This document shows positions 12,305-63,124 of a DNA stretch of 64,000 nt, in pieces (position 1 is the stretch's first letter; each line of letters begins with the position of its first letter). Made by a program: the position numbers and the translations under genes. This DNA comes from Podarcis erhardii (Eukaryota), in assembly GCA_964252035.1 (NCBI GenBank), contig OZ176207.1, one strand, 5' to 3'. The notes below the pieces were generated by a model. It searched no databases. It saw nothing but the letters and a program-made list of their open reading frames with translations, and was not told the origin of the DNA.

Positions 12305-12535
12305 GAGAGCCAGTGTGGTGTAGTGGTTAAGAGCGGTAGACTCATAATCTGGGGAACCGGGTTCGCGACTCCGCTCCTCAACATGCAGCTGCTGGGTGAC
12401 CTTGGGCTAGTCACACTTCTCTGAAGTCTCTCAGCCCCACTCACCTCACAGAACAACAACAACAACAACAACAACTCTTCTTCTTCTTCTTCTTCTTCTT
12501 CTTCTTCTTCTTCTTCTTCTTCTTCTTCTTCTTCT
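12305..12535 (+). mobile_element. tRNA-derived CORE-type SINE (probably Squam3-like), 3' part deleted, (CAA)n(CTT)n tail
   Basis: A box tggtgtagtggtt and B-box-like gggttcg; homologous to 26168-26472 and 62863-63124; possible ctgtaac TSD (12295, 12534). Confidence 0.85.
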
Positions 12536-14594
12536 GTAACCTGGAACAGGATAAGATCAGAAGCATCCCAGTTGGTCGCCACAAGAATCATGTGCCAGAG
12601 CCAATACTAATGCCATGCAATTGAGCCAAAACTATTAGGGTGCATAGGCCACAACCCCATGAACCTCAGCCAGCCCCCACCTGGCTGGCTGTCGTCTTGG
12701 TTACAACTGTGTATCAAGTTCCTCCTCCTTACATTTCCCAGGATTCTGGGGGGGGGGGGGGTCATGTGTTTTAAGTATAAGGTGTGTATGGAACCCTACC
12801 TGGAGATGCCATGGATTAAACCTGGTACCTTCCGAAGACCAAATGCTCTACCTCTGGGTTATGGGGTAGAGGTCCTTCTCTGTTCCCCCTCCCCAAGAGT
12901 TTTGGGAGATGGCCACACAAGAACGGGCTGTGGTGGTTCTCTGTCTGTGGAATGCTTGCCTGGTGCCATCATTCCATATCTTTAGGTTCCAGGCAAAAAC
13001 ATCATAAGCTCCAACTCTCTGAGTCTCTAAACCAGGACAGGCACCTTCCCACAGCACCCAAATTGGCCACCCTGCCCTCATGTTAGAAAATGGGATGTCC
13101 CGTTTTCCCCATGACACTTGAAGGGTATGAAACATTTCTCTTTCCCCAGGCCGTCAGCCATTAAATGATCTATGGTCTGCAAAATGTGTAATTGGGGGGA
13201 ATATTATTATGGTTATTTTATTATTATGCTTTCTATTTTTTATGCTTTGCATTATGTTTTTATTATTATGGTCTATAAAATATGTTCTCAGTGCCCTTGA
13301 ATTTTATGATAAAGGGTGGTATATAAATTTAATAATAATAATAATAATAATAATAATATGTCTTGTGGTTCGTCTGCCAGACCACCAGCAAAGGAGCCCT
13401 CTCAGGGGTTGTTCCTCTGGGCTCTAGGACTGGGCAGGAAATGTAGAATGCATGCATGAGACTGGCTTGATCGGAAAGTTCTACAATATGTTGCTTTTAA
13501 ATCTAAGATGCAGATTTTCTTGAATTGTCAGTCTATTGATATATGTGACAATAGAGTCTTCTAAGAAGCATCCGTAGACTGATTATTAAGCTGGAAACTG
13601 AAGTCTATAAACTTTCCAGCTGGGGTTTATTGTAATATTTAGCATTAGACATTCTCTCTTTTTTAAGATCTGCCAATTTTAACAGTAGTTTAGCAACAGA
13701 AAAAAGGGGGGGAGCACCTAAAATATACTCTGGCAATTTTCCAGTGCAAATTGGTGACTAGATGCTTGATTTCTATTGATTCCAATTGCTACACCACCCT
13801 CCTTTCCCCCCTTGTACCTCTTGCCTATGTTATTATTTAGTAGAGTAAGTAGCAGGATTTAATGTTTCCAAGAACTGGCAACAGATTGCACCAGCAGTAC
13901 TTAAACAGCAGCACACTGTATTTATTTGTATGCTGCGTGTTTCCCCAATGTATGTAATTCTATCTCCAAATTCAACATTTGTTGGCCATTAAATGGGGAA
14001 TGATTCTGTTTAAGTCAAAACAGCAGTCAAAATACAAACAAGGCTGCATTATGGCGAGGATGTGAACTAAATAGTTGACACCAAATTTCTGGAAAATAAC
14101 CAATGTTTTGTGTCAAATAATACACCCTACTTTGAAAGAGTGTAAATCACACCATTAATAATGGAGAAAATTCTCTGTAAGCACCTAGAGGGAAAATTCT
14201 CCTTATGCATTTGATCTCAGTGGCCTACCAATTTTTTTCCCTTTATTATTTTCTCCCTCTTTATATGTTTTGCAAAATATTGCTGCACCGAAATGTTGCC
14301 TTAAGAAGAGTGGGCGGGTGGGGGAGGGGAGGAAGAAAAAGGTCCTGCTGGATTTCATTTTAGTTGAGCGTAGCTGAAAAATTGAGGCAGATCCTTGGGA
14401 GAGCATTGTGGACTTGTCATCAGAGCCCTGCTGGATCAGGAGGAAAGCTCCAGCATCTCTGTTGTGAGAAGTGGCTTGCGGGGTGGGATAGAGCTGCCTT
14501 TCCAGCAGGTGGGTCATTGTTGTTTAGCAGGAGAGAGAGATGACATGGAGGTCGATGTAGTGCAAATGCACCAGTGAGCTTGCACAGGGCCAAC

Positions 14595-17927: not shown

Positions 17928-18050
17928 CCAGAGGGATAGTCATGTTCAGCTGTTGTAACAAAACCAAGAGAGTCCTGTGGCACCTTAAAGACTAACAAAT
18001 TTATTATGGTATAAGTGTTCTTATTTTATAGTCTGTTTCATTAGATTGCA
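17928..18050 (-). mobile_element. Degenerate older member of the hammerhead-bearing Penelope-like short repeat
   Basis: The minus strand reads ...cttataccataataaatttgttagtctttaaggtgccacagg..., homologous to the 3' part of the copies at 20238, 26102 and 38365. The ribozyme core is decayed (ctaatga...gaacac). Confidence 0.55.
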
Positions 18051-20141
18051 TGGAGTGTTATCCTGAATTACATTCGTACATATACAGGATTATGGAGGAG
18101 GAAATTGGAATGCAGAAAGTACAGACAGTGATAACTGAATTATTACTATAGCCATTTTACAAAAGATAGCTGACCTGATAGCAAAGATATGGCATTAGTA
18201 AGCCAATTAACATTCAGGTAGTGTGATTTGAAACAAAGGGGGGGGGGGATCCAAAACCCTTTGTTCTGATTCAGTCCACAAGTAATAGCATGGAACCTCT
18301 TGATGAACTGCAATTTGGAGGTTTCAAGTTGTAGTAAAATAGACTCTTTTCTTTTTAAGGAAAAAATAGCATGCAGGACAAAGTGTGTCCCCCTCTCCAA
18401 AACCTATTTTGTCCTGCTTCTCCCCTCTCCAATATTGCTTTCTGGTGCCACCAATGAGGATGAGGGTCAAATCACTGCTCTCCATGAGTTCTTCAGAATG
18501 GTCCATGTGTGCGGGGGGGGGGGCAGGCAGGGATCACATGGTTGGCACTCCCTGTTTTTCACTCTTGTTGTTGCTGCCTTCCCATGCAGACTATCATGTG
18601 CCAATTCCAGCCAATGGATGGATGTCATGGTGAGGGTGTAGTGGGCCAATAAAACCCTCCCTGCCCCCTCTCTCTCACTCTCCCTCCCACCCACCCTTGC
18701 AATGAATGTCTGCATGGCAGTGCCAAAAGTGGGAGAAAGGGGAAAGTGGGATGGTTAGGCCAGACTCAAAAGGAGGAGGATGCTTTTGGTCTACCTGACA
18801 GAAAGTGGAAAAGCTTCCCACCCATTTAAGCACTGCCACATGGAGAGAAAGTCATCTGTGTGCTTGGAAGTAAATGTCACATCCTTGCCAACATTGCCAC
18901 ATTTATCCACATTCTTTTAGCTGTTTCAACTTGTGTTTCTTACCTTTGCCTTACTGGTTTCTGACCTCTCCATTTGACTGGAGATTTCTAGTAGGGTTCT
19001 TTTGGCAGTTTTTCTTTAACTACGTACTTAGGTACATTTTCCTACCTGGCCCATGTTGTTTGCCTGCAGTTAACTCTGCTTCCAGCTTCTTCTCTCTCTT
19101 TTTTGAGAACTTGGGGAGATTTTATTTGTGTTTCTTTTTTTGCTTTGGAGGAGTTTTCAATCCATTATTCCATGAAGGGTTTCCTTTCAGAAAGGGTCAT
19201 TCACATTTAAAAATCTTTACCTGAATGAATATCAATGCAAAAGAGGAAAGCAAAAGATTTCCAACCTATGTTGTTAAAGTATAGCTGTCTCTCCCCCTTC
19301 CCTCCCTTCTTGTGTCTTCCTCCTTAATTATCTGTCTTGACACTCATTGATGGAGAACGTTAGTACATTTTGCAGAACCCAGAACCAAAGCCCTTGAACA
19401 GATTGATACACCAGCAGCAGAACAAACCCACCTCTTGGCACAGTTTGCCAGGTGAGTGGGCAAGTCACCTTCTGTCGCTTCTGGCTTCCCATCTCTTGCA
19501 GCTACATTTTGGATTCCTCTTGAAATTATTTCCTGTGTGTGTTTTGTCAATTAATCTCTTCCTAGAAACCAATTACTGTACATTCTGCAATATGTGTCTC
19601 CCCCACCACCAAAGAATTAAAGTAACTCAGAGAGAACTCACAAAGCTTCCTTTTGCAGGAGAAAGCTCAGCTACAGTGCATGTTTGTTGCATGTAGAATG
19701 ATAAAATGATCTCAGCGACAAAGGCTGGGAAAGGCTTCAGGGTGCTTGAAACTTCAGGGAGCTGCTGTCAGCTACCATATCATGAGCTGGACCTAATGCA
19801 AAAAAATGGAGAGACATCGATTGTGCTAAAAACAATAAGCTGCTATAGATGGTGGGAAATGCTGTATGCCTTTGATTTAGGTAAGACGTAAACATCAGGT
19901 TGCGACAGAATATACATGAAGCACACCCAAGAGCATAACCAGTTGTCACAACTAACAGAAGCCCTTGGACCATCATGTTAAAAGATTTTGAAGATGGGGG
20001 AAATCACGAGAGCAGAGCTCCAAGACTTTCCCCCGCCCCAGAACAAGAGACTACATCTGCCAAAATGCCACAGTAACTGAGGGACAGTCCTTGTTCTGGC
20101 AAGCAAATGAGGAGATAACAAGGCTTCCAAGTTTTGCTACT

Positions 20142-20214
20142 TAGAATCATAGAATCATAGAGTTGGAAGAGACCACAAGGGCCATCGAGTCCAACCCCCT
20201 GCCAAGCAGGAAAC
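20142..20214 (-). mobile_element. Young CR1 3' UTR-only insertion
   Basis: 73 bp matching the 3' end of the long CR1 at ~49343 with one mismatch, including the (ATTCTATG)n tail. Confidence 0.85.
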
Positions 20215-20237
20215 TTGTAGTGATTGATTAGCATACA

Positions 20238-20277
20238 GGTATCTGAAGAAGTGTGCATGCACACGAAAGCTCATACC
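20238..20277 (+). ncRNA. Minimal type-I hammerhead ribozyme motif, intact core
   Basis: Stem I ggtat(20238)/atacc(20273); CTGAAGA (20243-20249); extra A; stem II gtgtg-catg-cacac; GAAA (20265-20268); palindromic AGCT in place of stem III; UC cleavage site at 20271-20272. Confidence 0.78.
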
Positions 20278-20325
20278 AATAGCAAACTTAGTTTGTCTCT
20301 AAGGTGCTATTTTCTTATTTTGTTT
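20238..20325 (+). mobile_element. Hammerhead-bearing Penelope-like non-autonomous repeat, 3'-truncated copy
   Basis: The ribozyme is followed by aatagcaaacttagtttgtctctaaggtgcta, as in the other copies. Confidence 0.7.
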
Positions 20326-23300
20326 TAGCAGAAAGAAAGTAAGAGAATGAAGAAAGTAATCAAGCAGAATCCCAATTGTTTGATTGGGTTCCTACTTCAC
20401 ACTGGAACTGAAATGGTAACATTTCTTTGCAGGGTTGTTTGCATTTCATCTGGCTGAAGACCTTTTGTTTTCAAGATAAACCTATGCAGTCAGAACCTAG
20501 AAGTACCATTGAATTTAATGGCACTCGCTCCAGGAAATTATTCGCAGGATTATGGTCACGCTTATCCTAATGCAGTGGGTATTAGGCTATGTACCAATGC
20601 TCTTGGGGAAGAGGGGACAACACAGCTGCCTGCATTTTTGGACTATCCTTGAGGTGCCTGGCTGTGGACTCTCATTGGAGCTCATCACTCCAAAATTTAC
20701 CAGCACCACACTGCTCCTTGGATAAATTCACTGAAAAGGTTTACCACAATTTCACTATCCGCTAATAGGGTGCAGAACTCCAGAGGCCACATTTGCATGC
20801 AGCTGTCGTATGGAGTCACACAGCTAATGCAGAGAATATGTAGCTGATAACTGCAGGAAAGGAAGTTCCCCCAGCACATTTGAAAAAGCCAATAGAAACC
20901 ATAAGATGTACTACACCATAATAAGTATGGTTCCTAACCATCCCCTTACTCCAAAATAATAGCACTCTTGGTCACTTGGTACATTTCACACCCCTTCTTG
21001 CACAGCTTTATTTAGACCTTGGAGAGAAGCCAGAACTCCTTTGTTCAAGTTCGCATTTCAGCTGACTTGATGGAAATCTACACATCTGGAACAAGGAAAG
21101 CCATTCTTTCAAAGTGGACGCCAGCGTAGGACTTTGGCAACGAGAGTGAGCTTGGAGAACAAATATCATTTGGAAAATGGCACAGTGTTCAAAACAAACA
21201 CGGCCTCTAATCGGTTTGGGCTGCTTTTGAACCCGTGTGTGGTTATTTTAAATATATCTCTTCAGTTATTTTGAAAAATGGAAAATGTTTTCCTCCGGCT
21301 TGAAGGCCACCAAAAGCCTTGAAGTAAAGAGGGACAGGATCAGAAGACTAAGTTTGCAGCTTTCCTCCCAGGATTAGGAAGAATTCCCTTCCCTTGAAAA
21401 TATTAATAGCTTTTGGTGGTAATTGTTAAGTCAGAAGATTGGTGGCCTAGTAAGTTTCTAAACATTCGTGGTACAAGGAACACGCAGTGCCTCAAAAGCT
21501 TTGGATTTACTATGAAAGGCCAGTTTCTCTTGCCCCATTTTGTGGTTTAGCACAGTGCAAGCAGACAACATCCATGCTCAGATTTAAATCTGTGGTTCTT
21601 GATCCAACAATCAGTGCAGAAGCTGCCTTTAATTGCATTGGCTGTGAAAATGTGGGCGAGGAGTAGCGATAAAAGGGGGGGGGGCAAAAAAGTTCTTCAC
21701 CCTGCTGCATTTCCTCCTCCTCTTCAGCAGCAGGATGTAACAAAAAAGAAGTCTGAGCAAAATACACAAGCCATGAATTTATTTATTTATTGCATTTCTT
21801 CACTTATATGATTCCGATTGTAATTCTCTGGCTAGAGAATGCAGGCTTCCAAGCTCATTTCACCCCCTACCTTTGCATGGCCAAGGGAAGTCGTCTCACA
21901 AATTAACCCCCAATATAATACAAAGCTGCACAAGCTCCCAATATTTGTGTTTGGGTTTATTTCAAATTATTATTCTCAAACCAGTTTGCTAATTTAATAT
22001 TGTTTTGCACATTGATTCAAGGCGGCGTGTGACCTTTTGTAGTGTATTTGATGTCGTCTCCCAAGCCCCTATTAGTATTAATGGGCATTGTGCGGTTTGC
22101 CTTAGAAAGGGATTGTACGGCACCATGTTTTTGTTACATAAACTCTTGGAACGTGTATTACTGCATTCATAGAGAGCCAATTGTATTTGCAAGAGGTATG
22201 AAATTAACAAGTATGGAATTAGCCACCATGTGAGTGGAATGTGTGAGTTATTTCAAAAATATTTGTTTAGTTGCCTTGGAAATAAATAGTCCAGAATTGA
22301 TTTTAAAGAGGCTTTGATAATACAGTATTTGTACTCTAGTAGCCTGAAAGACTGCTAAGTATAACATGGCTTTGTTCCTAAAGGATTGTGCCTGATAGGC
22401 AAATGATAACCTTTAAAAAAAAAAGTACAAATTTAAGTGAACGTTTAATAAATTCTAAGCACATCCCTTTTGTATGGAGGTTCTTCCTTTTTCTTTCAAA
22501 AGCTCATTAGCTTTTAAAATATATTTTTTCTCCTCCTAATTTTCATGTAACTAGCTGAACTATGAGTCAGTCCAAATGAGATTTAAAATAGGTCTCAATT
22601 TTCTATGCATGTAACTGCTCTTAATTGCAAAGAACAAGTGTAGACTGCCTCTGTCCAATTAAGACAAAAAGAGAAAAGGATAATTAAAAATAAATCATAA
22701 CATTCAAAAGTTACAGTTCCATTTTTTAAATAAAATTAGAGGGGCTCCCCCCCCCCCATTTTTTGAAGTTTCTGTGAGAAGAAATGGAACAGTGACTGAA
22801 AGATGCATCGTTTCAGTTCTGCTATGTTATGGGCTTGTTCGCACCACAGTTAGCTGTGTGTTTGCAGCTGTTTGTGTTCCCATTAAATTTGCACAGTCCA
22901 CATGACAATATCCTCAAGCAGCACCAATATCAATGCTTTCCTCCTGTAAATTTAGGTTTACCCGGTATAGGGATAATCCAATAAATTGGAGGAAATTGGG
23001 CTTCAAACTGCTTCACTCAGGGTTGCAGACCATTTGTTCTGGTGTTTTGGAGTGGGTGGGTCACTGCCATTTTCTGCTACTTTCTTTTCCATTCCCGTTA
23101 CTTCCTCAGTGCTTTCTTTTCTGGCCATGCTCTTTACTATTTCTGGTGCACTCCTGAATATATATTTTTTAAAAAAATGTTTTCTTTTGATCCCTCAGTT
23201 TTGCACAAAGTCTGAAAATGGCATGAACAAACATTAAACATTTCTACTTCAGATATATTGCATAGCAATCTGAAAAAATGTGTACTGGGAATTTAGAATT

Positions 23301-25107: not shown

Positions 25108-26167
25108 TATAGGTAATTTATACCAGCATAAATTGTGCTGGCTTCCTATAGTTATGATTGTTCTGTTAGTAGTTAAAGTGGCACCACCTCATCATTCCTC
25201 ATTTATCCACTTCAGTGGACCAAGATAAGTTAGTCACGGAGCTGCAACATCGTCGGACTTCTTATTTCCCTCTTCCTGAACCCTCACACATTCCAGTGGA
25301 CTTTTTTGAGATTGCCAAGGACCATCTGTTTATGGCAATAATACCCGCCTCCAGTATGGAAAGCAAAACTAATTGCGCCGCACCTTTGCCAGCCTCAGCT
25401 TTAATTCCTGAATGTAGGCCTTGCATGCAAGTGAATTGATGCTATATTTCAACACCAGATGAAAGACTGACCCAAAATAAACATAATGCAATTTAACATA
25501 AAGAGATATATAGTACAAGATAGATATTCTCAAATCTTAGAACTGCTGCCATGTGTTACCATATTGTCTTCCTTCTGCTCCTTCTGTTCCCTGTTTTCAC
25601 ACATTTCCCCTCCTTCGTTTGTATTTTCCCCCCCTTTCCCATGGAATATTAAGAAAAAGTCAGGATTTACATTCTGTTACGAGTGCGGTATACTACTGAC
25701 CGCTGAGTTACAGCTATCCTTTCACTGCCGAGATTACTTTTGCCATTTTGTATTGATTCTTTTCTTCTTTACCGTTTCCTAAAGTGACAGCTGTGTAGCT
25801 GCCACTTTACAAGATTGAATTAATCTGCCCTGAGAGTTTAGTATCTAAAAGCTAGATGGAGGTGGAACAATATCTGGCTTGCTCACTCATTGCATTCATT
25901 CTATTCTAGAATGTATTCAGATTGGGGACAGACCTGTTCCATTCTGCAGCGGAACGGGGACAATCTGTCCAATCTGAATTCATTCTAAAATAAGAAGAGC
26001 AGACAAAAGTCGGGGGGTGCAGAACTTTCTTCCGCTCAAGGGCAAATTTCTCTCATGGTTAACCATTCAAGGGCTGAAATCCTGAACAGTTTGCAGCCAG
26101 TTACAGGTAGGTAGCCGTGCTGGTCTGCCGTAGTCGAAACAAAATAAAAAAGAAATTCCTTCCAGTA

Positions 26168-26472
26168 AAAGAAGAAGAAGAAGAAGAAGAAGAAGAAGAA
26201 GAAGAAGAAGAAGAAGAGGAGTAGTAGTAGTAGTAGTTTGGATTTGATATTCCGCCTTTCACTCCCTTTAAGGAGTCTCAAAGCGGCTAACATTCTCCTT
26301 TCCCTTCCTCCCCCACAACAAACACTCTGTGAGGTGAGTGGGGCTGAGAGACTTCAAAGAAGTGTGACTGGCCCAAGGTCACCCAGCAGCTGCATGTGGA
26401 GGAGCGGAGACGCAAACCCGGTTCCCCAGATTACGAGACTACCGCTCTTAACCACTACACCACACTGGCTCT
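26168..26472 (-). mobile_element. tRNA-derived CORE-type SINE (Squam3-like), full length, (CTT)n tail
   Basis: Pol III A/B boxes on the minus strand, (GAA)n/(GTA)n tail, inserted at ccagTA|gcacc with TA repeated. Confidence 0.9.
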
Positions 26473-26504
26473 TAGCACCTTAGAGACCAACTAAGTTTGT
26501 TATT

Positions 26505-26544
26505 GGTATGAGCTTTCGTGTGCATGCACACTTCTTCAGATACA
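26505..26544 (-). ncRNA. Minimal type-I hammerhead ribozyme motif, intact core
   Basis: The minus strand reads tgtatCTGAAGAagtgtgcatgcacacGAAAgcTCatacc; stem I gtat/atac. Confidence 0.75.
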
Positions 26545-27255
26545 GTTCAGATACAGTTCTTTGGTTCACAGGCAGTTTGCAGCCAAGTGACTCAAAGGAC
26601 TGCTTTTGCACAATTCTTTATTTATTCCTTTATTTATTACATTCAGAGCCAACCTATTGCATTTTGCTGGTCCAGGCAAAACTGAAAGTGCCTCCCCCTC
26701 TGCAAAATTGCCCTTGGACAACAACACAACAACACAGCTCTCCAGAGTTCGCCACCCTGAAGCAACCACCTCACAGCATCATGGCTGAGGCGCCTGTTTG
26801 CTTTTATTTCCCGCTTTTTCTCTTCAAGGAGCTCAAGTGTACACTATACCACAATGGCTGTCAGTGCAATCCTATTAAAGAGGAGGGAGAGATTCTGATT
26901 GGTTTACCTTTACATGTGAGCCTACTTGATTCACACTTTATGATTCTATGTGAATGGAAATGGAACTATCTACGTTCACACTTCTCAAAAATCTTGCAAT
27001 GCAGGTTACAACCAAAAAATGGGCACATAAATTTATATCTTAGGGGAAAGCATACAAGCATAGATTTGGATACAGATAGATTAGCATAAAAAGCAGAATA
27101 TTAGGGTAAATGGCAAAAAAAGAGAAAAGTGTGCTAGACTAAGTTTTACCTGCTAGCCACACCAAATTACTCTCCTAGCCATTTTTACAGCCTGAAAGGT
27201 GGCTTCTAAATTTGCATTTCAATACGCACCTCAAAGGAAAGAAAGAAGCTAGAGG

Positions 27256-35335: not shown

Positions 35336-35539
35336 NNNNNNNNNNNNNNNNNNNNNNNNNNNNNNNNNNNNNNNNNNNNNNNNNNNNNNNNNNNNNNNNN
35401 NNNNNNNNNNNNNNNNNNNNNNNNNNNNNNNNNNNNNNNNNNNNNNNNNNNNNNNNNNNNNNNNNNNNNNNNNNNNNNNNNNNNNNNNNNNNNNNNNNNN
35501 NNNNNNNNNNNNNNNNNNNNNNNNNNNNNNNNNNNNNNN
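35336..35539. other. Assembly gap (204 N)
   Basis: Run of N flanked by poly-T tracts. Confidence 0.99.
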
Positions 35540-37606: not shown

Positions 37607-38335
37607 AGAACAATCCCTGGGACAATTTATGTATCTGTTAATGGAATTTATGTAGCCTTCCCCTAGCATAGGTTTTCCGGGTGGATCATAAAACAAATAC
37701 AGCGATTAGAATACAATATAAAATGATAAAGACTATTAAAAACTCCAAACACAATTGCAACAGAGTATTTTAAACTCAGAGAACCAGCCCATAAGATGTA
37801 AGTTATTTTAAAAGATTGGATGAATAATACAGTCTTTACCTGGTGCTAAAACAACCACAAAGATGGCGGCAACCAAGACTTTCCCACTACTGTTACGGGG
37901 AGGCTGTTTCATCACAAGGTTGCCACTGCTGAAAAAGGCCTTCTCCTTGGTGGTTGCCCACATTGTGCATAAGAACGCATCTGCTCCCAAGGTAGTGTTG
38001 GGGAGGTACATCCCCATTTGTGTTGCACATCCATCTGTTCATTCCAGTATCAAACTTCATCCATATCTTGTTATCCCTACCTGCTAAAATTCTTACTATA
38101 ATGCTTGTTAGATATATGACATCCTCCACAGAGAACAATGTGGCTTCACGTTTTTCCAAATGAGTAATATGAAGCCTGTGCATAGTAGTTTGATAATATG
38201 AGCACCAGAAATAACCTCTTTCTGAGCCAACAATTCCTTGAAATAGTAAGTTGAACTCCCCACTTACACTTAATTCTTTAGCTTAACCTATTTTATCCCA
38301 TTGTTTTCAATTGGAAATATGATTATTTGGTTGGG

Positions 38336-38498
38336 ATGAGCTTTCGTGTATATGCACACTTCTTGTGTATCTGAAGAAGTGTGCATGCAAACAAAAGCTC
38401 ATGCCAATAACAAACTTAGTTGGTCTCTAAGGTGCTACTGGAAGGAATTTTTTTATTTTGTTTTGACTATGGCAGACCAACACAGCTACCTACCTGTA
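38336..38498 (+). mobile_element. Hammerhead-bearing Penelope-like repeat with an inverted 5' duplicate
   Basis: Monomer at 38365-38498; inverted partial copy at 38336-38364; the plus-strand core has GAAA changed to AAAA. Confidence 0.78.
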
Positions 38499-39570
38499 TT
38501 TGACTGGGGACAGAGCCTTCTATATTCACATCTGCATTCATAAAGCATTCCTTTTTGGAGTCATTTGTGAGCTCACTGTACAAATAATCAACAGTCCACA
38601 ATCTACCTGTGAATTGTGTTCACAATGGTTAACCACTACAATTCCCTGTATTTCCCATAGCTGGATGAAGATTGTAGCATCCATTCTAAAGGTTTGCAAA
38701 TAAAATAATATCATAGCTGGTTCAAAAAAGTGAAAGCTTTTATTCCTGAGCTACCCAGTCTTTTCTCAAACAGCAATAAAAAAATATAACAGTTGAATAA
38801 AACTAGATGCATTGTGATTTCAAATTCCATTTTCTATCAACTATTCATACATTATTGTCGGGCTCATATAATTATCTCTGTGTCAAACCCTTGGCAAGGA
38901 GTTCAATGAAGTCTTTCTAGCTGAGTGGTTAATAAGCAGTATCTTATATAAAGTCTGCCAGTTGCATTGTTGCAGTTCTTAAACACCACATTAATAACAT
39001 CACACAGATGTTCTCACAAGTTTAGCTACTATTGGGGTCAAAAGAATGTCCATCAGGACAGCTGTTCCACAGCCAGATTCCTGGAAACATTTTCCCTACC
39101 TATCTCCTACAAGTAGCCCAGGATTGTTCTGCAAACCAAAACAAAATACCTTTTACATCCCAAGTTTTGCCTTTATGGAGTTCAAATGTCGTGAAATAGG
39201 CTCTGTGCAACAACAAACTGTGAAAAACAGTTCAACTGCTTTCATATTCACTCGCTCTTGACCTCGTTCACTACCTTTATCTCCTCTACTGCTTCTTCCA
39301 GATAACCCACCTTGTAAGGGATTGTGTCATGCCATCACCGTATCCTCCAACATTTTCCTCCCCAAAATGATTTGTGTGGTATTTCACCCAAAGAAGCCAC
39401 CATGATTTCTTGCTGTGAATCCTGCAAGATCCGCTCCTTGCTTTGTCTGCCTTATTTCCACCTGGCCTGGGAGGGCAGAGCCCTGGCTGACTGGCTGCAA
39501 AGGCTACTTGTCCTGCTCCAAATGCCTAGGATTTATTGCTCAGGGTGTTGTTGCTGGGGTCAAGATTTAG

Positions 39571-44381: not shown

Positions 44382-44525
44382 TAGAATCATAGAATTGGAA
44401 AATTGGAAAAGACCCTGAGGATCATCTAGTCCAATCCCCTGCAATGCAGGAATATGCAGCTGTTCCACATAGGGATTGAACCTGCAACCTTGGCATTATC
44501 AGCACCATGCATTAACCAATAGAGC
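44382..44525 (-). mobile_element. SINE with tRNA-Ile-like head and CR1-type 3' tail
   Basis: Minus-strand head ...gcatggtgctgataatgccaaggttgcaggttcaatccc, then ggactagatgatcc...ttccaa...attctatgattcta. Confidence 0.7.
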
Positions 44526-45596: not shown

Positions 45597-46589
45597 TTGC
45601 TGTGAAGTAATGTAGGGCTGACCAGATGCATCAATGGAGGATCACCTGATCCTCTGCTTTGTGCAGAAAACATGAGGTGAATATTTCAGACCACCTCTGA
45701 TGAGTCTGAGGTTATTCTAAATCAACGGAAACTTAAATATGGGCATGAGGAGGAAGAAGAAACTCTGCTTTACACAAGATGCAGAAATGGAACTAAATCT
45801 GATAGAGAGAGAAAAAAGAAAATGATTTGCTGTTTTTCGTTAACATAGACATACACTGAAATAATGAAATAATGCTAAGAATTGTTATCTACATTGCTCA
45901 CATTGTTTCAATGCTTTCTCATCCAAACAAAATCCTTCTCTTGCAGATTATAAAAGCCAGCAAGACATTTTGGAAGAATTCAAGTTTTAAGATAAATTAT
46001 ACTAAATCAGTGACACCGAGATAGAGCTACAACCCTGTCATAGGAAGATCAAAAGCAATTATGAACTCCCCATAGCTTTGAATGGGCTCATTATTCATGG
46101 AAATACCTGGAATAAATACAACGGGTCAGCCATTCCAGGCAGGTTATTAGAATTTAATTACCCTCACATCATGGCAGTTTCAAATGGTGGGGCAAACTGA
46201 TTATTTTTTGAATGTACATCAGGCATATGTGTTTATTTTACTGTCAAAACCAACATGATCTGCCTGGTATTAGTGTGAAATCAGGGCCACATGTCATTAA
46301 TGGAAAAGTTTGCACCGAGTTCAGCAGAGTCTTGGATTTCATTCTGTCCATGAAAATACTTGTCGCAGTTAAATACAAGCATTGTCATATAAGATTGTGT
46401 GTGTGCGTGTGCGCGCATGCGCGTGTGTGTAGCTGTGGAACATACAGGACAATCTTGAGCATGTTTTCTCAGAAGTAAGTCCTATTAAGATCAATGGGAT
46501 TTATGCACTAGAACAACCTTCCTCAAAATCTAGTGCTCTCCAAATGCTTTGGAGTACAACTCAAAATATGAATGCTCAGGAAATGGACT

Positions 46590-46733
46590 TAGAATCATAG
46601 AATTGTAGAGTTGGAAGGGGTCACAAGGGTCATCTAGTCCAACCTTCTGCAACGCATGTAACATTTGCCCAACATGGGGCTCAAATCCATGATTCTGAGA
46701 TGAAGAGACTCATGCTCTGCCAACTGAGCTATC
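46590..46733 (-). mobile_element. SINE with tRNA-Lys(CTT)-like head and CR1-type 3' tail
   Basis: Minus-strand head gatagctcagttggcagagcatgagtctcttcatctcag...gagccccatgttgggc; tail ggttggactagatgacc...ttccaactctacaattctatgattcta. Confidence 0.72.
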
Positions 46734-47759: not shown

Positions 47760-49057
47760 TGCCCAGGTTAGAGGCCCCCAACTCCAACCCTGCTAGGAAT
47801 CTGTTTTCTGAGTCTGGGCCAGAGGAGCAAGGACAGCAGTTACAGACCTCAATGTACAGAATGATTCTCCCAGGAAGAAGAGATTGTGGTGGTGGTAGAT
47901 GACTCCCTACTGAGGGCAAGAAAGACAACAGTGTGCAAAGGTAATAGGATGCCCTGGAAGGTGTGTTGTTATCCATGTGCAAAGAGTAACAGAGAAGTTG
48001 CACATTCTTATAAAGCCCACTCACAACCCCTTCCTTCTTATTTGTGTGGGTACAAATGATACTGCCAGACACAGCCTATAATGTATAGCAAGGGACTATG
48101 AGACTCTGGGCAGGAAGCTGAAGGGCCTTATGGCAGAGGTGGTTTTTTAATCACTCCTTCCTGTTGAAGGTCATGGCCCAGGAAGAAAGAGGAAAATACT
48201 GGAAGTAAACCACTGGCTGCACAGTTGGCGTTATCGGGAAAGGTCTTTTGGCAAGAGATGGTTCTACCTCACAGTGGATGGCAATAATGTGCTTGCTAAG
48301 AGCCTCACAAACCTGATCAGCAGAGCTTTAAATTAAATCATGAGCAGGAGGGAGACAATATTACAGGTGACAGAGGAACACCTGGTACTGGGGATAATAG
48401 CTTCACTGATGCACAGAAAACTGTGGTGGTGCTACAGAACCCTAATAAACAACAGGAAACTACAAGAAGGAAGCAGCTGAAGGGAATGACTCGTGGTTTC
48501 AGTTGCCTCTATACAAATGCACAGAGTATGGGAAACAAGCAAGACAAATTTGAGCTCTTAATATCGGATGGCAGATATGACCTAATAGTCATTACTGAAC
48601 CCTGGTGGGATGAGACTCATGACTGGAATGTAGAAATGGAAGGGTATAACCTGTTCAAAAGGAATAGACCAAACAGGAAGGAAGGAGTAGCAACATTATA
48701 TGTATAGATCCACAACCTGGAGCACAGAAGGCAGATTGAGAATATAGGGATAAAAATTGTAGGAGATGGAAACAACAGTTACCTTACTGTTGGTGTTTGC
48801 TGTAGACCTCCAAGCCAGCCTGAAGATTGGATGTTGCTTCTCTAGAACAGATTACCGTACATTCAAAAGAGAGAGATATAGTAGTCATGGAATGTACTAC
48901 CTTGGAAGGTGGTGGACACTCCTTCCTTGGAGGTTTTTAAGCAGATGTTGGACAGCCAACTGTCGTGGATGCTTTACTTGAGATTCCTGCATTGCAGAGG
49001 GTTGGACTAGAAGACCCTTAGGGTCCTTTCCAACTCTACAATTCTGTGATTCTCTGA
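47760..49057 (+). pseudogene. Old CR1 relic: ORF1 esterase, start of ORF2 endonuclease, large internal deletion, 3' end
   Basis: Frameshifted VVV.DSLLR, ...[18 protein letters not shown] and VITEPWWDETHDWN; jump at ~48890 to WNVLPWKVVD; attctgtgattct tail. The 5' boundary is approximate. Confidence 0.82.
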
Positions 49058-49419
49058 AATCATCCTTGATCACCTACCAAGCTCATAAGATGCTTTGCAT
49101 CTTTAGTGATGAAACGTGATCCAAAACCTTGTTAAGCCTTATGAAATCACAAAAAAAGTTAATTCAAATTTGCATGTTAAATTCAGCTGTTGTTCAGAAT
49201 ATGCAAGGAGATGCTGGTGGTAGAGAATCAAAAATTATTAAGATTTATTTGTTTTTAATGGGGGATGCACTTCCTCTTACTGCTTGGGAATGCTTTTTGA
49301 TCCAGCTTCGCTTCTGGAGGTTAAGGTCATGGGCAGAAAAAATAGAATCATAGAATCATAGCGTTGGAAGAGACCACAAGGGCCATCGAGTCCAACCCCC
49401 TGCCAAGCAGGAAACACCA

Positions 49420-50037
49420 TCAGAGCACTCCTGACATATGGTTGTCAAGCCTCTGCTTAAAGACCTCCAAAGAAGGAGACTCCACCACACTCCTTGGCAG
49501 CAAATTCCACTGTCGAACAGCTCTTACTGTCAGGAAGTTCTTCCTAATGTTTAGGCGGAATCTTCTTTCTTGTAGTTTGGATCCATTGCTCCGTGTCCGC
49601 TTCTCTGGAGCAGCAGAAAACAACCTTTCTCCCTCCTCTATGTGACATCCTTTTATATATTTGAACATGGCTATCATATCACCCCTTAACCTCCTCTTCT
49701 CCAGGCTAAACATGCCCAGCTCCCTTAGCCGTTCCTCATAAGGCATCGTTTCCAGGCCTTTGACCATTTTGGTTGCCCTCCTCTGGACACGTTCCAGTTT
49801 GTCAGTGTCCTTCTTGAACTGTGGTGCCCAGAACTGGACACAGTACTCCAGGTGAGGTCTGACCAGAGCAGAATACAGTGGCACTATTACTTCCCTTGAT
49901 CTAGATGCTATACTCCTATTGATGCAGCCCAGAATTGCATTGGCTTTTTTAGTTGCCGCGTCACACCGTTGGCTCATGTCAACCAAGACTCCTAGATCCT
50001 TTTCACATGTACTGCTCTCAAGCCAGGTGTCACCCAT
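49420..50037 (-). pseudogene. CR1 ORF2 C-terminal portion, out of frame with the main ORF
   Basis: [35 protein letters not shown]; +1 frame offset from 50069..52333. Confidence 0.92.
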
Positions 50038-50068: not shown

Positions 50069-52333
50069 CTAGTGCAATACTTTACATTTCTCCCTGTTAA
50101 AATTCATCTTGTTTGTTTTGGCCCAGTTCTCTAATCTATCAAGGTCGTTTTGAAATGTGATCCTGTCCTCTGGGGTGTTAGCCGCCCCTCCCAGTTTGGT
50201 GTCATCTGCAAATTTGATCAGGATGCCCTTGAGTCCATCATCCAAGTCGTTGATAAAGATGTTGAACAAGACCGGGCCCAAGACAGAACCCTGTGGCACC
50301 CCACTAGTCACTCTTCTCCAGGATGAAGAGGAACCATTGATGAGCACCCTTTGGGTTTGGTCAGTCAGCCAGTTACAAATCCACTGAGTGGTAGCATAGT
50401 CAAGACCACATTTTACCAGCTTCTTTACAAGAATATCATGGGGCACCTTGTCAAATGCCTTGCTGAAATCAAGGTAGGCTACATCCACTGCGTTCCCTTC
50501 ATCTACCAGGCTTGTAATTCTGTCAAAAAACGAGATCAGGTTAGTCTGACATGACTTATTTTTCAGAAATCCACGCTGACTATTGGGGATCACAGCATTC
50601 CTTTCTAGGTGCTCACAGACTGTTTGCTTAATGATCTGCTCCAGAATCTTCCCTGGTATTGATGTCAGACTGACTGGGCGGTAATTATTTGGGTCCTCTT
50701 TTTCCTCCTTTTTGAAAATAGGGACAACATTTGCCCTCCTCCAGTCTGCCGGGACTTCGCCTTTTCTCCAGGAATTCTCAAAGATGACTGCCAGTGGTTC
50801 TGAGATCACATCTGCCAGTTCTTTTAATACTCTTGGATGCAGTTCATCTGGCCCTGGAGACTTGAATACATCTAGACTAGCCAAGTATTCTTGTACTATC
50901 TCCTTAGTTATTCTGGGCTGTGTTTCCTCTGCTGAATCATTTGCTCCAAATTCTTCAGGTCTGGCATTGTTTTCTTTATCGGAGAAGACTGAGGCAAAGA
51001 AGGCATTGAGGAGTTCAGCCCTTTCTGTGTCCCCTGTTTGCATTTCACCATCTTCTCCTCTGAGTGACCCCACTGTTTCTTTGTTCTTCCTTTTGCTACG
51101 AACATACCCATAAAAGCCTTTTTTGTTGCTTTTAACCTCTCTAGTAAGTCTGAGTTCATTCTGTGCTTTAGCTTTTCTGACTTTGTGTCTACACGTGCTG
51201 GCTGTTTGTTTGAATTCCTCTTTGGTGGTTTCCCCCCTTTTCCATTTTTTGTACACATCCTTTTTTAATCTTAACTCAGTTAAAAGTTCTTTAGATAGCC
51301 ACCCTGGCTTCTTTAGGCACCTTCCATGTTTCCGTCTCATTGGTATTGCCTGAAGTTGTGCTTTTACTATCTCCCTCTTAACAAACTCCCAGCCATCATG
51401 AACTCCCTTTCCTTTTAGTATTACTGTCCATGGGATCTCACCCAGCACTTCCCTAAGTTTTATGAAATCGGCTTTCTTAAAGTCAAGAAATTGAGTCCTA
51501 GTATGCTTGGCTGCTCCTTTCCACTGTATAGTAAACTTCAGAAGAGCATGATCACTCGCACCTAATGATCCTTCCACTTCTACCCCACTAACCAGGTCAT
51601 CAACATTGGTTAGGACCAGATCTAAAATGGCTGTTCCTCTTGTTGCTTCTCCCACTTTCTGGACAATGAAGTTGTCTGCAAGGCCAGTGAGGAATCTGTT
51701 TGACCTTATGCTCTTGGCTGAGTTTGACATCCAACAAATATCCAGGTAACTGAAGTCCCCCATTACTACTATCTTCCTTCCTTTTGCATGCTTGGCCATG
51801 TGTTCCAGGAAGGCATCATCTATGTCCTCCATTTGGCTTGGGGATCTATAGTAAACTCCCACAGTGAGGTCACTGTTATTCTTCTCTCCCTTAATTTTGA
51901 CCCAAATGCTCTCACTTTGGCTTTGAGGTTCTAAATCTTGGATCTCTTCACAGGTATACACATCCCTGACATATAACGCCACTCCTCCTCCTTTCTTGTC
52001 TGGTCTGTTTCTCTGAAATAGATTGTATCCCTCCATTATTACATTCCAATCGTGGGACTTATCCCACCAGGTTTCAGTGATACCTATTATGTCATATTTA
52101 GTTTGCTGTACCAAGAGCTCAAGCTCATCTTGTTTATTTCCCATGCTTTGCGCATTAGTGTACAGACATTGAAGTCCATTAATCATTCCCCTGTGTCTCT
52201 TATTTAAGGATTTTTTTCCTCCCACCACTAGGTCTGCGTTCTGTTTGCTCCATTTGGTCAATGACATTTGGATGATCATCTTCATCAATTGATAGACTCC
52301 TACCTTCAGGAGCACTGTCTCCCTCCCCCACAT
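50069..52333 (-). CDS. CR1 ORF2: apurinic-like endonuclease plus reverse transcriptase, prematurely terminated (754 aa)
   Basis: EN motifs YTNAQS, GITETW, GDFS, LDLVLTN, SDH; RT motifs [31 protein letters not shown]; stop after KCKVLH. Confidence 0.95.
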
Positions 52334-62862: not shown

Positions 62863-63124
62863 CAGTGTGGTGTAGTGGTTAAGAGCAGTGGACTCATAAT
62901 CTGGTGAACTGGGTTCGATTCCCTGCTCCTCCACATGCAGCTGCTGGGTGACCTTGGGCTAGTCACACTTCTCTGAAGTCTCTCAGCCTCACTCACCTCA
63001 CAGAGTGTTTGTTGTAGGCGAGGAAGGGAAAGGAGATTGTTAGCCACTTTGAAACTCCTTAGGGTAGTGATAAAGCGGGATATCAAATCCAAACTCCCCC
63101 TCCTCCTCCTCCTCCTCCTCTTCC
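62863..63124 (+). mobile_element. tRNA-derived CORE-type SINE (Squam3-like), (CCT)n tail
   Basis: A box tggtgtagtggtt and B box gggttcgattccc; collinear with 26168-26472. Confidence 0.9.

What the first reader, a model, noticed from the sequence alone, without database searches (positions are those of the whole stretch)
20238..20277. Intact minimal hammerhead ribozyme in a dispersed ~130-bp non-coding retroelement
Seen: ggtat-CTGAAGA-a-gtgtg(catg)cacac-GAAA-gc-TC-atacc. This gives a perfect 5-bp stem I, all core nucleotides (C3-A9, G12-A14), a stem II that is itself a 14-nt palindrome, and a UC cleavage site (predicted cut after 20272). Stem III is reduced to the palindrome AGCT. Established: minimal type-I hammerheads with a palindromic stem-III remnant are typical of Penelope-like element terminal repeats and of retrozymes, and they cleave as dimers. 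Inference: the window holds four copies (17928, 20238, 26102, 38336) of an abundant, ORF-less, ribozyme-carrying mobile RNA family that may not be annotated as such in this lineage. One deviation from the canonical core is the extra A between A9 and stem II.
Basis: partly seen in the sequence, partly recalled or inferred. Interest (0 to 1): 0.8.

Follow-up and report, generated by a model that had tools for sequence, protein, structure and literature searches.

The report
Penelope-type minimal hammerhead in lizard repeat
The 40-base motif is a well-formed minimal hammerhead ribozyme of the kind already described in Penelope-like retrotransposons. It heads a ~132-base insertion module that recurs in this lizard genome, so it is real but ordinary.

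Summary
The motif at 20238-20277 is exactly as described. A strict minimal-hammerhead descriptor finds it, plus one identical copy on the minus strand. It finds nothing in 200 shuffled windows.

The "extra A" after A9 is not a deviation. Together with the G10.1-C11.1 pair and the palindromic AGCU remnant of stem III, it is a published hallmark of the dimer-dependent hammerheads of Penelope-like elements (PLEs).

The motif forms the 5' edge of a 132-135 bp unit. The window holds three young insertions:
- one lacks its last ~35 bases;
- one is split by a SINE;
- one carries a head-to-head inverted arm and a dead core (G12 changed to A).

It also holds one old, decayed relative. A perfect 13-bp target-site duplication, the fixed 3' end, the reiterated 5' tip and the inverted arm all fit PLE-type reverse transcription.

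No tandem array and no PLE reading frame lie in the window. Covariation cannot be judged from four near-identical copies.

PLE hammerheads are published for turtles, snakes and Anolis, and reptile retrozymes appear in a 2026 preprint. This scan has already noted the same family many times elsewhere in this genome.

Verdict: a new member of a known kind, of low interest.

The parts
20238..20277 (+). Intact minimal type-I hammerhead (copy A): stem I, CUGAAGA core, bulged A 20250, stem II palindrome 20251-20264, GAA, AGCU helix-III remnant, C17 at 20272.
   Evidence: monomer fold forms stems I and II, -10.1 kcal/mol
20238..20326 (+). Copy A of the unit, profile positions 1-98. The last ~35 bases of the tail are missing, and an 11-base internal deletion is present.
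26102..26543 (-). Copy B. This is one full unit on the minus strand (hammerhead 26504-26543), interrupted at 26168-26472 by a tRNA-type SINE with a microsatellite tail. Its CpGs are retained.
26544..26572 (-). 29 extra bases at the 5' junction of copy B, including the reiterated 11-base tip of the unit (TRF period 11, 2.3 copies at 26535-26559).
26573..26585 (-). Upstream target-site duplication of copy B (13 bp, perfect).
26087..26099 (-). Downstream target-site duplication of copy B.
38367..38500 (+). Copy C, a full-length unit. Its hammerhead is inactivated by G12 to A (CpG decay) and by a C to A change in stem II. An A to G change in stem I keeps a U-G pair.
38331..38364 (-). Inverted partial copy (unit positions 8 to 36-41), joined head-to-head to copy C with 9 bases between the arms.
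38324..38335 (+). Candidate upstream target-site duplication of copy C. It matches 38497-38508 at 10 of 12 bases and overlaps the outer end of the inverted arm.
17937..18020 (-). Old, diverged relative of the unit (tail region). Its hammerhead part is decayed.
   Evidence: E 6.8e-6

Best explanation
[quoted passage not shown] Stems I and II fold within one RNA. Stem III is reduced to the self-complementary AGCU, so an active site can form only when two copies pair through AGCU. This would happen in a tandem transcript or between two transcripts.

The motif is the first 40 bases of a 132-135-base module made of the hammerhead plus a ~98-base tail. The module runs from a fixed RNA 5' end to a fixed 3' end, the latter being the place where the PLE reverse transcriptase starts copying. 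The dispersed short copies are cDNA insertions of that module made by the PLE enzyme at nicked DNA. Most likely they are by-products of an autonomous lizard PLE rather than a separate self-propagating element.

Once inserted, the copies carry no promoter upstream and decay neutrally.

Shown here: the anatomy of the motif, the copy boundaries, the target-site duplication, the inverted arm, and the decay of copy C.

Inferred: PLE parentage, dimeric cleavage, and that the common 5' end is a transcript start.
For: [quoted passage not shown]

The published Anolis Poseidon_Ac hammerhead has the same plan with different helix sequences. It has a bulged U, a stem II closed by G-C, and ACGU where this element has AGCU. 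The pairing is therefore kept across families while the letters differ.

Insertion marks match what is published for PLEs. That work reports internal reverse-transcription start sites giving a fixed tail, and extension of both DNA strands. Here:
- there is a perfect 13-bp duplication around copy B;
- the 3' ends lie within 2-4 bases of each other in B and C;
- C carries a head-to-head inverted arm;
- B has a reiterated 5' tip.

All three young copies start at the same G. Copy C shows neutral decay, including loss of G12. The family occurs in Podarcis muralis, and Penelope repeats are annotated in lacertids.
Against: No PLE reading frame (RT or GIY-YIG) lies in the window. The only long ORF is an APE+RT LINE. 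A search of 1.8 billion proteins with the 38-residue open frame of the tail found only short spurious ORFs and no PLE protein. The link to a parent element therefore rests on analogy and on unchecked notes from other windows.

Rfam's hammerhead models do not match. Four near-identical copies give no compensatory change.

Cofolding predicts that two copies prefer a long duplex through the stem II palindrome (-37 kcal/mol). That duplex leaves no helix III.

For the Anolis element, no RNA-seq reads ending at the cut site were found, and cleavage was dispensable for insertion in vitro.
Confidence: 0.75

Rival explanations
1. The unit is an independent non-autonomous element, either a monomeric non-LTR retrozyme or a SINE-like RNA. 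It would be transcribed from tandem or circular forms, cut by its own hammerhead, and borrow the PLE enzyme in trans.
For: - The 5' and 3' ends are fixed and the size is small.
- The unit starts GTA and ends GTA, and copy B repeats an 11-base piece that reads like an end-to-start junction.
- A 2026 preprint reports non-LTR retrozymes in 4 of 5 reptiles, with a mean consensus length of 176 bp and many monomers, and derives them from PLE pLTRs.
- No protein relative of the tail frame was found.
Against: - No direct tandem of two units lies in the window, and a tandem is the defining layout of retrozymes.
- The bases upstream of the shared start differ among copies (CT, GT, AG), so the junction reading rests on two bases in one copy.
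- Single copies cannot release a monomer by self-cleavage.
- No promoter is known inside the unit.
Confidence: 0.17
2. The motif fits the hammerhead pattern but is catalytically silent. It would be kept in the repeat for another reason, such as binding by the reverse transcriptase or a DNA/RNA palindrome function.
For: - PLE min-HHRs cleave poorly in vitro.
- For the Anolis element, no in vivo cut ends were seen.
- The predicted dimer favours a non-catalytic duplex.
- There is no covariation in this window.
Against: - Every invariant core position and all four PLE-specific traits coincide, with zero descriptor hits in shuffles.
- The Anolis counterpart cleaves in vitro, and C3G/G8C mutants behave as expected.
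Confidence: 0.05
3. The unit is a SINE-like element moved by a LINE (CR1/L2 type), and the hammerhead resemblance is secondary.
For: - The window holds an intact-looking LINE ORF.
- The unit ends in a short CTAC-CTAC-like repeat.
- The target duplication is 12-13 bp long.
Against: - There is no tRNA, 7SL or 5S head, no poly(A), and no microsatellite tail.
- The head-to-head inverted arm and the hammerhead are PLE marks.
- The genuine SINE copies in the window look quite different.
Confidence: 0.03

Closest known systems
Minimal hammerheads of Penelope-like elements (Cervera and de la Pena 2014, PMC4209133; Lunse, Weinberg and Breaker 2017, as cited in PMC7761336)
   Same: - Type-I layout and full catalytic core.
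- Bulged nucleotide after A9.
- G10.1-C11.1 pair.
- Helix III reduced to a 4-base palindrome.
- Long helix II.
- Thousands of dispersed copies reported in vertebrates, including turtles and snakes.
   Different: The exact sequence was not found in the searchable literature. Here helix II is itself a perfect 14-base palindrome. The pLTR setting could not be seen in this window.
Poseidon_Ac (PAc) hammerhead of Anolis carolinensis (PMC11167929)
   Same: This is a lizard PLE whose hammerhead has the same architecture and lies at the pLTR-ORF junction. Reverse transcription starts inside the RNA and gives a fixed tail. Both DNA strands are extended.
   Different: The helix sequences are unrelated (ACGU in place of AGCU, and other stems). 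In PAc the ORF starts at stem II. Here the open frame from the ATG in loop II has no protein relative.
Animal non-LTR retrozymes (PMC7761336; bioRxiv 10.64898/2026.07.22.740005)
   Same: Short ORF-less units with type-I, often dimer-dependent, hammerheads. They co-occur with PLEs, and monomeric dispersed derivatives exist.
   Different: Retrozymes are defined by tandem repeats and abundant circular RNA. Neither is seen in this window, or neither could be tested here.
Rfam Hammerhead_1 (RF00163) and the HH9/HH10 amniote hammerheads
   Same: The same catalytic core and type-I topology.
   Different: Those have a closed helix III and loop-loop contacts. The covariance models give no match here even at E 10.

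Membership tests
PLE minimal hammerhead (min-HHR) | Invariant core: C3 U4 G5 A6 N7 G8 A9, G12 A13 A14, A15.1-U16.1, H17 | tested here: met
   Met in copies A and B; copy C has G12 changed to A.
PLE minimal hammerhead (min-HHR) | [quoted passage not shown] | tested here: met
   A at 20250. The trait is listed in PMC4209133.
PLE minimal hammerhead (min-HHR) | G10.1-C11.1 closing pair, and paired helices I and II | tested here: met
   G20251-C20264. Helix II has 5 bp (up to 7) and helix I has 5 bp.
PLE minimal hammerhead (min-HHR) | Helix III absent, positions 15.2-16.2 palindromic | tested here: met
   AGCU at 20268-20271. The AGCU/AGCU duplex is -2.5 kcal/mol.
PLE minimal hammerhead (min-HHR) | Compensatory changes in helices across family members | tested here: inconclusive
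   Four sequences gave 0 double changes, 2 wobble-compatible single changes and 2 broken cells. That is too few, and they are too similar.
PLE minimal hammerhead (min-HHR) | Location in the terminal repeat of an element with RT and GIY-YIG domains | tested here: inconclusive
   No such ORF is in the window, and the protein search with the tail frame found no PLE protein. Other windows of this genome are said to hold one (s1-268925, unchecked).
PLE minimal hammerhead (min-HHR) | Self-cleavage as a dimer | not testable with these tools
   This needs in vitro transcription.
PLE insertion | Target-site duplication, fixed 3' tail, frequent inverted 5' partial copy | tested here: met
   13-bp perfect duplication; 3' ends of B and C within 2-4 bases of each other; inverted arm of 34 nt, 85% complementary.
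Non-LTR retrozyme | Two or more units in direct tandem, each with a hammerhead | tested here: not met
   TRF finds no array with a period near 132. nhmmer finds only single copies.
Non-LTR retrozyme | Abundant circular RNA of unit length | not testable with these tools
Rfam Hammerhead_1 / HH9 / HH10 | Match to the family covariance model | tested here: not met
   No match at gathering score, nor at E up to 10 on 20150-20400.

The most novel reading that the evidence does not exclude
The 132-base unit is a self-standing, PLE-dependent mini-element whose RNA begins with the ribozyme. Under this reading the hammerhead does cut in lizard cells, and the cut ends leave traces in the DNA. One candidate trace is the inverted arm of copy C, whose outer end lies 2 bases past the predicted cut if the 12-base duplication is taken at face value. 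The reiterated 5' tip of copy B is another. If so, insertion junctions would be a genomic record of in vivo PLE hammerhead activity, which is so far undetected.
Probability: 0.12. Interest if true: 0.55.

Novelty: new member of a known kind. Interest (0 to 1): 0.25.

Why it matters
The role of PLE hammerheads is still an open question: cleavage is weak in vitro and has not been seen in vivo. A very abundant, young lizard family with a clean motif and fixed ends would be a convenient test system. As a finding, though, it adds one more family to a class described since 2014 and already characterised biochemically in another lizard. For annotation, the practical points are these:
- Such ~132-base hits should be labelled as PLE hammerhead-tail modules.
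- The bulged A is normal.
- Rfam models will miss them.

Tried and rejected
- **Rfam.** Scans of the whole window and of the local region gave no hammerhead match. This is expected for a motif without helix III, so it is not counted against the motif.
- **More DNA copies.** A 23-base tail anchor found nothing in metagenome or viral contigs. A hammerhead pattern with a free helix II interior found two identical metagenome contigs with a similar motif in ORF-free DNA. It also found two chance hits inside bacterial genes. None helps with covariation.
- **Protein route to copies.** The word search found nothing. The full search found six short spurious ORFs, one of them from Podarcis muralis.
- **In-window covariation.** Uninformative.
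- **PLE-mobilised SINE.** I considered that the SINE inside copy B might be a PLE-tailed SINE. This is rejected, because other copies of that SINE end in their own microsatellite and have normal duplications.
- **Literature search with a 20-base string of the motif.** No paper was found.
- **Lunse et al. 2017.** The paper is not held.

Full report
**Observation**

- a 5-bp stem I;
- CTGAAGA as C3-A9;
- one extra A (20250);
- a 5-bp stem II around CATG, inside a 14-base palindrome;
- GAA;
- the self-complementary AGCU;
- C17 at 20272, followed by the 3' strand of stem I.

The 30-base core recurs unchanged at 26510-26539 on the minus strand, and with two changes at 38371-38400. None is expected by chance.

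I wrote a descriptor from the published rules for minimal hammerheads and ran it on both strands. It hit only 20238-20277 and 26506-26543, and nothing in 200 dinucleotide-preserving shuffles. As a single strand the RNA folds into stems I and II (-10.1 kcal/mol). AGCU cannot fold on itself.

**What the repeat is**

BLAST and a small nhmmer profile define a unit of 132-135 bases: the hammerhead plus a tail of about 98 bases.

- **Copy A (20239-20326)** lacks the last ~35 bases.
- **Copy B** is a single minus-strand copy, 26543-26473 plus 26167-26102. It is interrupted by a tRNA-type SINE and its microsatellite.
- **Copy C (38367-38498)** is full length. It is preceded by a head-to-head inverted partial copy at 38331-38364.
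- **A fourth locus (18020-17937, minus strand)** is a distant, old relative of the tail with a decayed ribozyme part.

The repeat just upstream of copy A (20139-20214) is an unrelated family with its own copies elsewhere.

**Insertion marks**

- Copy B is flanked by a perfect 13-bp duplication, at 26573-26585 and 26087-26099.
- Between the upstream duplication and the unit lie 29 extra bases. They include the unit's first 11 bases reiterated 2.3 times.
- Copy C has a 10-of-12 candidate duplication.
- The 3' ends of B and C fall within a few bases of each other.
- All three young copies begin at the same G, while the bases before it differ.
- Copy C has lost G12 through a CpG-to-CpA change and carries a stem II mismatch. 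Its one stem I change keeps a U-G pair.

This pattern is neutral decay after insertion.

**Comparison with what is published**

[quoted passage not shown] They also report such motifs in turtles and snakes. Three of these four traits are directly visible here.

*The 2024 study of the Anolis Poseidon element (PAc).* It shows the following:
- a hammerhead at the pLTR-ORF junction that cleaves in vitro;
- C3G and G8C mutants that each abolish cleavage, and a double mutant that partly restores it;
- reverse transcription starting at two adjacent internal sites, which explains the fixed tail of PLE insertions;
- extension of both DNA strands;
- no RNA-seq reads ending at the cut site.

Reading the deposited consensus across its unit junction gives CTGAGGA, a bulged T, a stem II closed by G-C, GAAA, and ACGU before the cut. 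That is the same plan with different helix letters, including a swapped but still palindromic 15.2/16.2 pair. This between-family comparison is the only compensatory evidence I could obtain.

*A 2026 preprint.* It reports non-LTR retrozymes in four of five reptiles, with many monomers, and derives them from PLE terminal repeats.

*Lacertid annotation.* Penelope repeats are annotated in lacertid lizards.

**Which lineage**

A full HMMER search with the 38-residue open frame of the tail returned six short, evidently spurious ORFs. One is the C-terminus of a Podarcis muralis Ig-like protein model, that is, an exonised copy. The family is therefore present in wall lizards, and the window is probably from a lacertid or a near relative. 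No long PLE protein matched, so the tail frame gives no evidence of coding.

**Mechanism**

The best reading is that the hammerhead belongs to the RNA of a PLE and can act only when two copies pair through AGCU. The 132-base module spans from the RNA's fixed 5' end to the reverse-transcription start site. The short dispersed copies are cDNAs of just that module.

Whether they are by-products of an autonomous element or a separate non-autonomous lineage cannot be settled here. I favour the first. No tandem of units exists in the window, and the copies bring no promoter with them.

One caveat on activity: cofolding predicts that two copies prefer a 14-bp intermolecular duplex through the stem II palindrome (-37.2 kcal/mol). 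That arrangement leaves no helix III.

**Limits**

- Collection scans gave no usable extra copies.
- In-window covariation is nil because the copies are nearly identical.
- The N run at 35336-35539 was left untouched.

**Earlier notes of this scan**

Notes on the same genome describe the same family many times. Follow-ups elsewhere read the ~130-base copies as the last module of an active lizard PLE starting at one fixed base. Those notes are unchecked leads. My window independently shows the fixed start, the duplication and the inverted arm, but not the parent element.

**Verdict**

The feature is real and the ribozyme class was correctly recognised. It is already known as a kind, and here it is one more family member in a lineage where it was to be expected.

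Noticed in passing
window 26168-26472 (-): The SINE inside copy B is flanked by only about 2 shared bases (TA), not a normal duplication. Other copies of the same SINE (12306-12539, 62863-63123) have ordinary ends. It could be a nested insertion with a tiny duplication, or a template-switch chimera made during reverse transcription.
   Followed up: partly
window 26535-26559: The first 11 bases of the unit (minus-strand reading CTGTATCTGAA) are reiterated 2.3 times at the 5' junction of copy B. The scan noted reiteration of the element's tip at another locus of this genome.
   Followed up: partly
window 38331-38366: If the 12-base duplication is accepted, the outer end of the inverted arm of copy C falls 2 bases beyond the predicted hammerhead cut. 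If the arm instead extends over 5 bases of microhomology, it falls 7 bases beyond. The two readings cannot be told apart at one locus.
   Followed up: partly
window 20226-20231 and 20325-20330: A 6-base repeat (TTAGCA) brackets copy A. If it is a true duplication, copy A was born without the last ~35 bases of the tail, meaning reverse transcription started in the T-rich stretch.
   Followed up: no
window 50069-52333 (-): An uninterrupted 754-residue ORF with an APE-type endonuclease and a reverse transcriptase (RVT_1 E 5e-34). This is a LINE, possibly young. A 205-residue ORF follows it at 49420-50037.
   Followed up: partly
window 20139-20214, also 49343-49415, 46587-46662, 48981-49053, 44382-44452: A separate ~75-base repeat family beginning with reiterated ATAGAATC lies next to copy A and is scattered through the window. 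It is unrelated to the hammerhead unit.
   Followed up: no
protein P0006 (UniRef100_A0A670HY04, Podarcis muralis): The last ~35 residues of this Ig-like protein model are a translated copy of the hammerhead-tail unit. This is either exonisation or a gene-model artefact.
   Followed up: no
protein P0004 (ENA contig, 511 bases): This ORF starts with the reverse-strand translation of the hammerhead and later carries the forward translation. The head-to-head arrangement seen in copy C therefore recurs at another locus.
   Followed up: no
protein P0001 (ENA contig, 18299 bases): Three tandem 54-residue repeats resemble the tail frame weakly (38% identity). This may be a tandem array of a related unit in another organism. 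Its DNA could not be fetched.
   Followed up: no
L001 8798-8840 and L002 6645-6687: Two metagenome contigs share an identical hammerhead-like motif in ORF-free DNA. It has the same core flanks, a 3-bp stem II and a 4-of-5 stem I. It probably comes from a eukaryote.
   Followed up: partly
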